64,000 bases of DNA from Asterias rubens (lineage: Eukaryota). Below the pieces are notes generated by a model. The model was given only the letters and a program-made list of their open reading frames with translations, searched no databases and had not been told where the DNA came from. Each line of letters opens with the position of its first letter. Positions within the stretch are counted from its first letter, which is position 1. This document shows, in pieces, positions 49,001-52,000 of the stretch. The stretch is from positions 124,001 to 188,000 of the forward strand of contig NC_047064.1 in assembly GCF_902459465.1 (NCBI RefSeq), given 5' to 3'. A program made the position numbers and the translations under genes.

Positions 49001-52000
49001 AATATGTACTACCCTGTCATCACCTAGTAACCACGTTGGGCCAGTAACCCCACTATGAAACAACTGTTGCAGTCTTGTACGTTTTGTTTACAATAATATG
49101 ATGTTGAATGGTTTAACTATAAATGAAACACTTCAGGTCTTGTAAACAATCATTTCTGGCCATATTTCAGTTCTGAGTTACAAGTAATGTAGTTAAGAAT
49201 ATCTTAGAAATTCAAGCCAGTTATCTAGAGTCTTAATGATTTGTTTCACAATATTTTCTGACCTGTTTTGTATAGAGATGGAATAGAGAGAGCCATTGCC
49301 TTCACCCAGTACCCTCAATATAGCTGTTCAACCACTGGAAGTAGTCTGAACGCTATTTATAAATATTATGCAAAGCATCCAGAATTAGTAGCCAATAGCA
49401 AGATGAGATGGAGTGTGATTGACAGATGGCCAACCCACCCAGGACTTGTAAAGGTTGGTTGCTACACATTGCTCTTAAATCACTTCACACCGTCCTGACA
49501 TCTAATAATGCCTGATTGTTCAAACTGAATTAAAGAGACCTTTGTGTCGGTTTTAGAAATGTTCAGAACATCTATTGTTCAGTTGACTTAATGCCCAGAT
49601 TTTCTGTGACCAGCATGCACTGTGCATGCACTCAAGGTGTGACACCATGTTTGACCTGTACTGGAATTCATTCTCAAAATCTCCCTTTTACTGGGAATTA
49701 TCCAGACCTTCATTTCATTGTGTGACGATAGCCTGACAAACAAGCATTTTGAGTGATTAATAGGATACCATAATTGTTTCCCTGTCTCAATAGTTACTTG
49801 TCATTGGATTTAGTGTAATTTGTAATTGTCTGACTGTATGAAAACAAGCCTGGAATTTATTTTTTGGATATGCTGAATGGCAAGGCGATTTTCGTTTTGC
49901 AAAAGGCACTTCCATTGGAAAATCTTATTTGAAGGGGCACCAATGCCAGCCCCAGGGGCAACGTAGGCCATGGCCCTCTTTGCCTGCTTGTAATTCCAGG
50001 CTTGTGACAACATTCAAACAGTCTTGATAATGAATTTGTTGGGGCAAGTAAAGTTGTCTGCTTACCGTGCCTTATTTCCCTTATTGAGGGTCATTCTAGT
50101 TAGCAATATTCACAGTTTGAAAATCAAATTAATTTTTCATCAGGCATTCACACAACTAGTCAAAGATGAACTTGCGAAGTTCCCTGAGGAGGTTCAAGAT
50201 GATGTAGTTATACTCTTCTCTGCACACTCCTTACCTATGAGTGTAAGTTGTTTCTTATCTTAACAATCTTACTAATCATTACTATGGTTTCCCATTACAA
50301 TGTATGTAAAGTGTTTACCAAGAAAGATTCACAGGTGTTAGGCACTCTATATCCATCCTTCCTTTCATGTAAGAGCAGGGCCCAATTTCATGGCTCTGCT
50401 TACCACAGAATTCTGTGCTTGTAGAACCCTTGCAGCACACAATTCTATGATGTGTAAGCGCAGAATTCCGCGGTAAGCAGAACCATGAAATTGGGCCCAG
50501 ATCTCTTAACCACTAAACCACTGAGTGCTGGGTCCAATTTCATAGAGCTGCCTAAGCACAAAATATTGCTTAAGCGAAAAAATCCTTGCTTAGTAAAATC
50601 AGATTACGGCCAAGACTCCACTTAATTGTTGTGCTAACTCAACAACAGCTAAATACCAGTCACAAGCAATGTATATGTGTATAAGGCATGAAATTATGGC
50701 CACTAACATGTGTAAAATAAGCGAGCTATTTTCGTGCTTAAGCAATTTTGTTTGCTTAAGCAGCTCCATTAAATTGGCCCCTGGTGAGAGGCCAGTTCCA
50801 ATCCTGTTATAAACCATGTTAATAGTTAGTATTGCATCAACTTGATTTCATGTATTAATTACAAGGGGGTAGAGAAATTTATATTTTTGTAGTTTTGGGG
50901 TAATAGCCAATTCAAAATGGCATCTTGTTGAAGCATGCTCAATAATCAAGTGATGATCACACAGTGCAGAATACAGATTGAGTGCACTGGAGAAATACTG
51001 AACAATTGCTGTGTGGTTTTGTATTTGTTGGTACAGGTTGTGAATAGGGGTGACCCTTATCCAGCTGAAGTTACTGAACAATTGCTGTGTGGTTTTGTAT
51101 TTGTTGGTACAGGTTGTGAATAGGGGTGACCCTTATCCAGCTGAAGTTACTGAACAATTGCTGTGTGGTTTTGTATTTGTTGGTACAGGTTGTGAATAGG
51201 GGTGACCCTTATCCAGCTGAAGTTGCTGCAACTGTACAACGTGTCATGGAGGCTCTTGACTTTTCTCATCCTTATAGATTAGTGTGGCAATCACAAGTAA
51301 GTAGTACCTGTATATACTATAGATTGTATTAGATCAGCACCTACAATAACAACAAATATTCCAGTTTCCAAGGGAATCATTCTTAACACAAAAATAGTTT
51401 TTTAGCTGAATCGTTGTCCTAAAGTTTGTAGTTCTAACCTCAGTAGAATCATACAAAAATGTATGTTTCCTCAATATAAATGTATTGTGCCTCCGGGCAT
51501 GCTTGGTTATGGGTTTGAATCCACCAGAGTTGTATGACCAGGGATTTTTGCATTGGGTCACTGGGCATGCTTGGTTATGGGTTTGAATCCCACCAGAGTT
51601 ATATGACCAGGGATTCTTGCATTGGGTCACTGGGCATGCTTGGTTATGGGTTTGAATCCCACCAGAGTTATATGACCAGGGATTCTTGCATTGGGTCACT
51701 TGGCATGCTTGGTTATGGGTTTGAATCCCACCAGAGTTGTATGACCAGGGATTCTTGCATTGGGTCACCGGGCATGCTTGGTTATGGGTGTGAATCCCAC
51801 CATAGTTGTATGACAAGGGATTTTGCATTGGGTCACCGGGCATGCTTGGTTATGGGTTTGAATCCCACCATAGTTGTATGACCAGGGGTTCTTGCATTGG
51901 GTCACCGGGCATGCTTGGTTATGGGTTTGAATCCCACCAGAGTTATATGACCAGGGATTCTTGCATTGGGTCACCGGGCATGCTTGGTTAAGGGTTTGAA

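What the first reader, a model, noticed from the sequence alone, without database searches (positions are those of the whole stretch)
50997..51296. Triplicated FECH exon-8 acceptor: only the third of three identical 3' splice sites gives functional enzyme
A perfect 76-bp unit (40 nt intron end + 36 nt exon) occurs three times, creating identical acceptors at 51036, 51112 and 51188. Using the first or second reads [28 protein letters not shown]-stop, truncating the enzyme before catalytic and [2Fe-2S] residues and predicting NMD. With identical branch/pyrimidine signals the splicing choice should be leaky. This would be a natural hypomorphic allele or a built-in attenuator, analogous to the human FECH IVS3-48C cryptic-acceptor allele in erythropoietic protoporphyria. 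The exon starts with GT (AG|GTTGTG), so weak re-splicing is another escape route. Microhomology (GAAATACTGAAC vs GAAGTTGCTGCAAC) suggests slippage. Zero divergence means it is very recent or an assembly error.
Basis: partly seen in the sequence, partly recalled or inferred. Interest (0 to 1): 0.75.

Follow-up and report, generated by a model that had tools for sequence, protein, structure and literature searches.

The report
Triplicated ferrochelatase splice acceptor, last copy used
A young 76-base tandem repeat has copied the splice acceptor of one ferrochelatase exon three times, but the only transcript seen uses the last, original copy, so it is a probably harmless exon-boundary minisatellite of a known kind.

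Summary
A perfect period-76 repeat runs 50996-51224 (3 units plus 1 nt). Each unit carries the last 41 nt of intron 7 (likely branch site TACTGAAC, U/G-rich tract, CAG) and the first 35 nt of the ferrochelatase (FECH) exon that matches human exon 8. It is not an assembly error. In an independent short-read contig set (X1), the left flank contig ends exactly where a k=31 graph must branch. A 106-nt cycle contig has 2.6-2.8x the flank depth; three copies predict 2.62x. A relative about 2-3% divergent (X5) has one unit, so the triplication is recent. A 2628-nt spliced transcript contig (X15), identical to the window in both exons, joins 50242 directly to 51189, the third acceptor. No RNA contig covers units 1-2. 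No data show that they are used, and minor NMD-sensitive use could not be measured. It fits the "mirage" class of exon-boundary minisatellites (amphioxus Adh3 and globins) and mirrors the human F7 intron-7 minisatellite. Earlier notes of this scan report the same kind of repeat in other genes of this genome (GATD1, REPS1, sAC, TYMS). Verdict: real, ordinary, a new member of a known kind.

The parts
50144..50242 (+). FECH exon 7 (ends ...CCT ATG AGT, phase 0; donor GTAAGT at 50243)
   Evidence: Matches Pfam PF00762 positions 166-196. X15 transcript contig covers 50142-50242 with 0 differences. Sequence read.
50243..51188 (+). Intron 7 as actually spliced (946 nt). It contains two high-copy hairpin elements and repeat units 1, 2 and the intronic part of unit 3.
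   Evidence: X15 contig record 9 joins 50242 to 51189. GT...AG ends confirmed.
50996..51071 (+). Repeat unit 1: decoy 3' splice-site module (TACTGAAC 50996-51003, AG 51035-36, 35 nt copy of the exon start)
   Evidence: The X1 left flank contig ends at 51025, exactly the predicted k=31 branch point.
51072..51147 (+). Repeat unit 2: decoy 3' splice-site module (AG 51111-12)
   Evidence: The X1 106-nt cycle contig 51072-51177 has 0 differences at depth 474.7 and contains the unit-to-unit junction.
51148..51224 (+). Repeat unit 3 (plus 1 nt): the authentic acceptor module (AG 51187-88), the one used
51189..51296 (+). FECH exon 8 (36 codons, VVNRGD...VWQSQ; donor GTAAGT at 51297)
   Evidence: Pfam PF00762 positions 198-233. 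Human FECH 269-303 in 7ctc_A, E 1.4e-13. X15 contig 51189-51298 with 0 differences.
51121..51123 (+). TAG stop reached if acceptor 1 were used. The equivalent TAG at 51197-51199 is reached if acceptor 2 were used.
   Evidence: Translation

Best explanation
This is a real, very recent 76-bp x3 tandem duplication. It is a nascent minisatellite of the 'mirage' type that happens to straddle the intron 7 / exon 8 boundary of the ferrochelatase gene, in a genome and a gene already full of intronic minisatellites. Each unit is a complete 3' splice-site module. It starts with the likely branch site TACTGAAC and continues through an AG-free zone of about 41 nt with a U/G-rich tract. It ends with CAG and 35 nt of exon. 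Shown here: three copies exist in DNA reads, a close relative has one copy, and the dominant mRNA joins exon 7 to the third, exon-proximal acceptor. The two upstream units are therefore simply removed as 152 extra nucleotides of intron 7 and the protein is unchanged. Inferred: the third site wins by exon definition. It is the acceptor next to the real exon body and its strong donor (CAA|GTAAGT, 108 nt away). An exon starting at acceptor 1 or 2 would contain one or two intron-type U/G-rich tracts and branch sites, which should act as silencers. Any product from acceptors 1 or 2 carries a TAG well upstream of four further junctions and would be removed by NMD. The net effect on enzyme output is probably nil or small. 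The repeat is best seen as a neutral or slightly deleterious structural variant, not a device.
For: Perfect period-76 identity 50996-51224. FECH identity and exon frame. DNA run X1: the flank contig ends at 51025, the predicted branch point. The 106-nt cycle contig contains the unit-to-unit junction with 0 mismatches at 474.7 depth against 166.9-180.9 for the flanks, a ratio of 2.62-2.84. A simulation gives 1.62, 2.62 and 3.62 for 2, 3 and 4 copies. DNA run X5 (organism C, about 2-3% divergent): one contig passes from 50956 through 14 other letters to 51148-51343, which is a single unit. X15: a 2628-nt contig joins 50242|51189 with 0 differences, with no depth on the unique intron parts or on 50990-51145. 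The same gene holds three other arrays of 38, 78 and 69 bp units, about 9 kb in total. Literature: mirage repeats of intron-3'-end plus exon-start in amphioxus globins and Adh3 do not disturb regular splicing (PMC3087553). In human F7 only the exon-proximal copy of 5-9 identical donors is used (PMC1557585).
Against: The RNA evidence is one assembled contig from a run whose RNA nature is a guess and whose donor genotype is unknown. That animal could carry fewer copies. Contigs drop rare isoforms and NMD would hide decoy products, so absence of decoy use is not shown. X1 may be the very sample the assembly was made from, so the copy number is confirmed against assembly error but not in an independent animal. 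X1 has no laid contig on 51198-51480, so the right-hand exit of the array is not seen in that run. Classic duplicated-acceptor constructs gave conflicting results on which copy is used (reviewed in PMC1557585). A BRCA1 duplication spanning intron 9 and exon 10 does yield mRNA that retains the duplicate (PMC11839443).
Confidence: 0.75

Rival explanations
1. One reading: leaky decoy acceptors. A sizeable fraction of splicing events use acceptor 1 or 2, the products are destroyed by NMD, and the allele is a natural hypomorph or a built-in attenuator of ferrochelatase.
For: The three modules are identical from -41 to +35, so local signals cannot tell them apart. Both decoys lead to a TAG stop upstream of several junctions. 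Contigs cannot exclude minor or NMD-degraded isoforms (notes). A BRCA1 boundary duplication does give duplicated mRNA.
Against: The only transcript contig uses 51189, and nothing lies on units 1-2 in X15. The repeat is absent from the close relative, so it is not a conserved regulator. The known analogues (F7, amphioxus mirages) use only the authentic exon-proximal site. X1 looks homozygous for three copies of a single essential haem-synthesis gene, which is hard to square with strong loss of output.
Confidence: 0.15
2. Assembly artefact: the genome really has one or two units, and the assembler or polisher over-expanded the repeat.
For: Zero divergence between units. The window has a sized N gap (61331-61585), so the assembly is not gap-free. 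X1 may be the reads used for the assembly.
Against: The unit-to-unit junction exists in short-read contigs. The cycle contig depth is 2.62-2.84x the flanks, matching three copies and not two (1.62x). The flank contig breaks exactly at the predicted branch.
Confidence: 0.04
3. In-frame rescue. Each 33-nt exon fragment is used as a mini-exon (donor GAA|GTTACT at 51070 and 51146). Alternatively, the junction re-splices from AGT|GTTGTG. Either would give a protein with repeated [11 protein letters not shown] or restore the normal message.
For: 33 nt is a multiple of three, and GT dinucleotides are present at the right places.
Against: Both donors are far from consensus. The mini-intron would be only 43 nt. 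The X15 contig shows a single direct 50242|51189 junction with no insert.
Confidence: 0.01

Closest known systems
Amphioxus 'mirage' minisatellites (Adh3, Canestro et al. 2002; globin BflGb6/BflGb9, Ebner et al. 2010, PMC3087553)
   Same: Both are tandem repeats whose unit spans an exon-intron boundary. BflGb6 repeats the 3' end of an intron plus the 5' part of the next exon 3 to 6 times, exactly this geometry. Regular splicing is kept, and units can be up to 100% identical.
   Different: This one is in a different phylum (a starfish, according to earlier notes of this scan) and a different gene. The unit is 76 bp rather than 150-160 bp, there are only three copies, and they are perfectly identical. 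Length polymorphism within the species was not examined here.
Human F7 intron-7 37-bp minisatellite (Borensztajn et al. 2006, PMC1557585)
   Same: A minisatellite unit spans an exon boundary, so several identical, functional splice sites compete. Only the exon-proximal, authentic one is used.
   Different: F7 repeats the donor (5' site, first copy used). Here the acceptor with its branch site is repeated and the last copy is used. The F7 choice was proven by 50 constructs. Here the evidence is one transcript contig.
Human FECH IVS3-48C low-expression allele
   Same: It is the same gene, and a competing upstream acceptor would give an NMD-targeted message.
   Different: In man a single-base change modulates a pre-existing cryptic site 63 nt upstream, in a different intron, and aberrant use is measured. 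Here whole acceptor modules are duplicated and no aberrant use is seen.
Intron gain by tandem duplication of an AG|GT site (Rogers model; Hellsten et al. 2011, PMC3265369; Lehmann et al. 2010, PMC2891723)
   Same: A short intragenic tandem duplication is made harmless because splicing removes the redundant copy and leaves the peptide unchanged. NMD is proposed to clear unspliced forms.
   Different: No new intron is created here. An existing intron is lengthened by 152 nt, because the duplicated segment already contained a working acceptor.
BRCA1 partial exon 10 tandem duplication (PMC11839443)
   Same: The tandem duplication covers the intron end plus the exon start, duplicating the acceptor.
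   Different: That duplication is 2012 bp with 1617 nt of exon.

Membership tests
Mirage / exon-boundary minisatellite | Head-to-tail tandem repeat of two or more units | tested here: met
   Period 76, 3.1 copies, exact identity 50996-51224. Supported by read-derived contig depth.
Mirage / exon-boundary minisatellite | The unit spans an exon-intron boundary, including the splice signal | tested here: met
   Each unit holds 41 nt of intron 7 ending in CAG plus 35 nt of exon 8. The boundary is fixed by the transcript contig junction 50242|51189.
Mirage / exon-boundary minisatellite | Regular splicing is kept: the authentic exon-proximal site is used and the repeats stay intronic | tested here: met
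   The X15 2628-nt contig uses 51189, and no RNA contig lies on 50990-51145. Caveat: the RNA donor's genotype is unknown and minor isoforms are invisible in contigs.
Mirage / exon-boundary minisatellite | Length variation between alleles or individuals | tested here: inconclusive
   There is one unit in the about 2-3% divergent organism C, against three in X1 and the window. No second individual of the window's own species was laid, because read laying is capped at one call.
Ferrochelatase (Pfam PF00762) | Collinear match of the exon pieces to the family profile | tested here: met
   Seven pieces cover profile positions 1-286 in order. Exon 8 covers 198-233 at 31.3 bits against a cut-off of 27. 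PDB human FECH hits have E about 1e-13.
NMD-coupled unproductive splicing used as a regulator (poison acceptor) | The alternative site gives a premature stop | tested here: met
   TAG at 51121-23 or 51197-99
NMD-coupled unproductive splicing used as a regulator (poison acceptor) | The unproductive isoform is actually made | tested here: inconclusive
   It is not seen in X15 contigs, but contigs drop rare variants. The raw RNA run X22 belongs to the single-copy relative.
NMD-coupled unproductive splicing used as a regulator (poison acceptor) | The poison site is conserved across related species | tested here: not met
   Organism C has a single unit (X5 record 20), and the copies have zero divergence.
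Intron gain by tandem duplication (Rogers model) | Duplication inside a coding exon creates a new intron between duplicated AG|GT sites | tested here: not met
   The duplicated segment includes a pre-existing acceptor. The transcript shows the old intron extended, with no new intron.

The most novel reading that the evidence does not exclude
The two decoy acceptors may capture a meaningful share of splicing events in carriers, with NMD hiding the products. The triplication would then be a segregating low-expression ferrochelatase allele in a wild marine invertebrate. More broadly, the several exon-boundary minisatellites that earlier notes of this scan list for this genome (GATD1, REPS1, sAC, TYMS) may point to a duplication process biased towards splice junctions rather than to chance.
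Probability: 0.12. Interest if true: 0.55.

Novelty: new member of a known kind. Interest (0 to 1): 0.25.

Why it matters
The practical value is modest. First, gene predictors and spliced aligners can pick the wrong one of three identical acceptors, so this FECH model should be anchored on 51189. Second, it is a clean natural test case for 3' splice-site choice. Three complete modules, identical from -41 to +35, sit in an essential single-copy-looking gene, and the exon-proximal one wins. That is the mirror image of the F7 donor minisatellite, and classic duplicated-acceptor constructs disagreed on this point. Third, together with other cases noted in this genome, it suggests that 'mirage' repeats, described so far mainly in amphioxus, are also common in an echinoderm. 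If the decoys turned out to be used, it would be a natural hypomorphic haem-synthesis allele.

Tried and rejected
1. I tested whether the three large arrays in other FECH introns (38, 78 and 69 bp units) are older mirages derived from FECH exon boundaries. The only local-alignment scores above shuffles came from flanks that overlap the arrays themselves, so the answer is no.
2. Microhomology at the borders: the best local alignment of the two border regions is an off-register 9-mer, and the true junction shares 1 nt.
3. Mini-exon and re-splicing routes were rejected because the donors are poor, the intron would be 43 nt, and the single direct junction shows no insert.
4. ARAGORN finds no tRNA in the 69-bp array despite a T-arm-like motif.
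5. The original mirage paper (PMC117041) is not held. I cite it through PMC3087553.
6. One paper search failed on syntax. Another returned only a paper on wobble (tandem-site) splicing that I did not use.
7. The raw RNA run X22 turned out to belong to the single-copy relative, so it could not measure acceptor choice. The joints table was swamped by a high-copy intronic repeat, so I took the exon 7-8 junction from the contig pieces table.
8. I did not run the large protein searches. Identity was settled by Pfam and PDB, exon by exon. Joining the exons into one protein was left out.

Full report
**1. What is in the sequence.**
The stretch 50996-51224 is an exact period-76 tandem repeat of three units plus one base. 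Tandem Repeats Finder reports period 76, 3.1 copies and no indels. My script finds the unit at 50996, 51072 and 51148, with identity ending at 51224. None of its 31-mers occurs elsewhere in the window on either strand. A repeat of this kind cannot arise by chance.

**2. The gene.**
- Stop-free pieces on the + strand match Pfam Ferrochelatase (PF00762) in collinear order. They start at 41851, 43081, 48678, 49274, 50144, 51189 and 55842 and cover profile positions 1-286.
- I read two further exons by eye. One is near 56464 ([16 protein letters not shown]). The last is 56872-57003 and carries the C-terminal cysteine cluster.
- The piece 51189-51296 aligns to human ferrochelatase residues 269-303 in the full-length chain 7ctc_A, with E about 1e-13.
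- Exon 7 ends at 50242 (…ATG AGT) before GTAAGT. Exon 8 is 51189-51296, 36 codons in phase 0, followed by GTAAGT.
- If two exons lie upstream of 41851, the numbering agrees with the 11-exon human gene. This point comes from my own knowledge and was not tested.

**3. Anatomy of the unit.**
- Each unit starts with TACTGAAC, a near-copy of the branch-site consensus. A U/G-rich tract and CAG follow, and then the first 35 nt of exon 8.
- In each unit, the stretch between the last AG of the preceding exon fragment and the acceptor AG is free of AG for 41 nt (AG list). The branch site serving acceptor 3 must therefore lie inside unit 3. Each unit is thus a complete 3' splice-site module. This is an inference from the first-AG rule.
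- From acceptor 1 (exon start 51037) or acceptor 2 (51113) the frame reads 12 normal residues, 16 foreign ones and then TAG. Only 51189 keeps the frame.

**4. Is it real DNA?**
I had one read-laying run and used it on 49950-51480 with four runs.
- *Flank contig.* In X1 (DNA, organism A, the best holder) a 289-nt contig matches 50737-51025 without a difference. It ends at 51025, which is exactly the last 31-mer that still contains the unique base 50995. A k=31 graph must branch there if a cycle follows.
- *Cycle contig.* A 106-nt contig (76+30, one turn of the cycle) matches 51072-51177 without a difference. It therefore contains the unit-to-unit junction.
- *Depth.* The cycle contig's depth is 474.7, against 166.9 and 180.9 for the single-copy flanks. 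That is a ratio of 2.62-2.84. A simulation gives 1.62, 2.62 and 3.62 for two, three and four copies. Three copies on both chromosomes fits best.
- *Caveats.* X1 may be the sample behind the assembly. This excludes an assembler artefact but is not an independent animal. X1 also shows no laid contig on 51198-51480, which the tool says proves nothing.

**5. Age.**
- X5 (DNA, organism C) differs from the window by about 2-3%: 17 differences in 838 aligned bases, and a share of words of 0.44.
- One X5 contig runs from 50758-50956, through 14 other letters, straight to 51148-51343. That genome has a single unit.
- Together with the zero divergence between units, this makes the triplication a recent event in the window's lineage.

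**6. Which acceptor is used?**
- X15 (organism D) holds a 2628-nt contig at depth 153 that matches 50142-50242 and then 51189-51298 back to back, with no difference from the window.
- X15 has no depth on the unique parts of intron 7 or on 50990-51145. It therefore behaves as a spliced transcript.
- The perfect exon identity places X15 with the window's species. Organism C differs at four to five exon positions.
- The junction 50242|51189 is unambiguous, because the contig continues into the unique part of exon 8.
- X22 (raw stranded RNA, organism C) shows exons 7 and 8 expressed from the + strand. It belongs to the single-copy relative, so it says nothing on the choice.
- The dominant message therefore uses the third acceptor.
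- Two things are not shown. I do not know whether the X15 animal carried three units, or whether a minor NMD-sensitive fraction uses the decoys.

**7. Mechanism proposed.**
- Shown: the copies are identical from -41 to +35, so local signals cannot discriminate between them.
- Inferred: position decides the choice. The third module abuts the true exon body and its consensus donor 108 nt away. An exon starting at 51037 or 51113 would enclose one or two intron-type branch and U/G-rich tracts.
- This matches the human F7 minisatellite, where five to nine identical donors follow exon 7 and only the exon-proximal one is used, although all are functional (PMC1557585).
- The same paper recalls that early duplicated-acceptor constructs in globin genes gave opposite answers in different laboratories. 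The outcome here was therefore not a foregone conclusion.
- A BRCA1 duplication of intron end plus 1.6 kb of exon does leave the duplicate in mRNA (PMC11839443).

**8. What it belongs to.**
[quoted passage not shown] They were found again in amphioxus globin genes.
- BflGb6 repeats the 3' end of an intron plus the 5' part of exon 2 three or six times, depending on haplotype. Its units are 81-100% identical and splicing is undisturbed (PMC3087553).
- The present repeat meets the structural criteria and, as far as tested, the splicing criterion.
- It also relates to the tandem-duplication model of intron gain (PMC2891723; PMC3265369). The difference is that here an old intron grows by 152 nt and no new one is born.
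- The same look-up lists further exon-boundary minisatellites in this genome, which those notes call a starfish: GATD1, REPS1, sAC and TYMS. I did not test those loci, and I did not verify the organism.

**9. Context in the gene.**
- FECH here carries three other arrays: 38 bp x22.5 (43254-44108), 78 bp x52 (44565-48620) and 69 bp x60 (51493-55616). None derives from a FECH exon boundary.
- Local tandem duplication is plainly frequent in this region. A 76-bp event that happens to include an acceptor is expected now and then.

**10. Verdict.**
The functional reading (leaky attenuator or hypomorph) is unsupported but not excluded.
- The repeat is real, recent, most likely neutral, and a new member of a known kind.

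Noticed in passing
window 50372-50781: Intron 7 holds two adjacent hairpin (MITE-like) elements: 50372-50504 (49-nt arms, 88% complementary) and 50530-50781 (54-nt arms, 81%). Their word depth is 1e5-1e6, against about 170 for single-copy flanks in DNA run X1. They are also very abundant in X5, X15 and the raw RNA run X22, and they swamped the joints table.
   Followed up: partly
window 43254-44108, 44565-48620, 51493-55616: Three large intronic minisatellites (38 bp x22.5, 78 bp x52, 69 bp x60) fill about 9 kb of the FECH gene. The first starts 27 nt after an exon donor and the second ends 58 nt before the next acceptor. None is derived from a FECH exon boundary. The 69-bp unit has a tRNA T-arm-like motif, but ARAGORN finds no tRNA.
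   Followed up: partly
window 50957-50995: In the related organism C (X5 record 20), the 39 nt directly left of unit 1 are replaced by 14 other letters, and homology resumes exactly at the unit start. A second rearrangement or indel therefore abuts the left edge of the repeat.
   Followed up: no
window 51198-51480: DNA run X1 has no laid contig here, although X5 and X15 do. The cause could be the tool's filter for conserved or human-like records, or a true hole. The right exit of the array is therefore not seen in X1.
   Followed up: no
window 30090-32554 and 59745-63036: Neighbouring genes lie on the + strand. Upstream exons have an L7Ae domain (PF01248), SECISBP2-like by eye, followed by a 348-codon acidic open frame. 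The downstream exons look like an SLC22/MFS transporter by eye, with no Pfam hit at exon level. A sized N gap lies at 61331-61585.
   Followed up: partly
window 50175, 51215, 51230, 51263: There are exon differences between the window and organism C RNA (X22). 50175 C>A is seen in about two thirds of reads, so it is polymorphic. 51215 A>T, 51230 A>T and 51263 T>C appear fixed in the reads. I checked 51215 and 51230 and both are synonymous.
   Followed up: no
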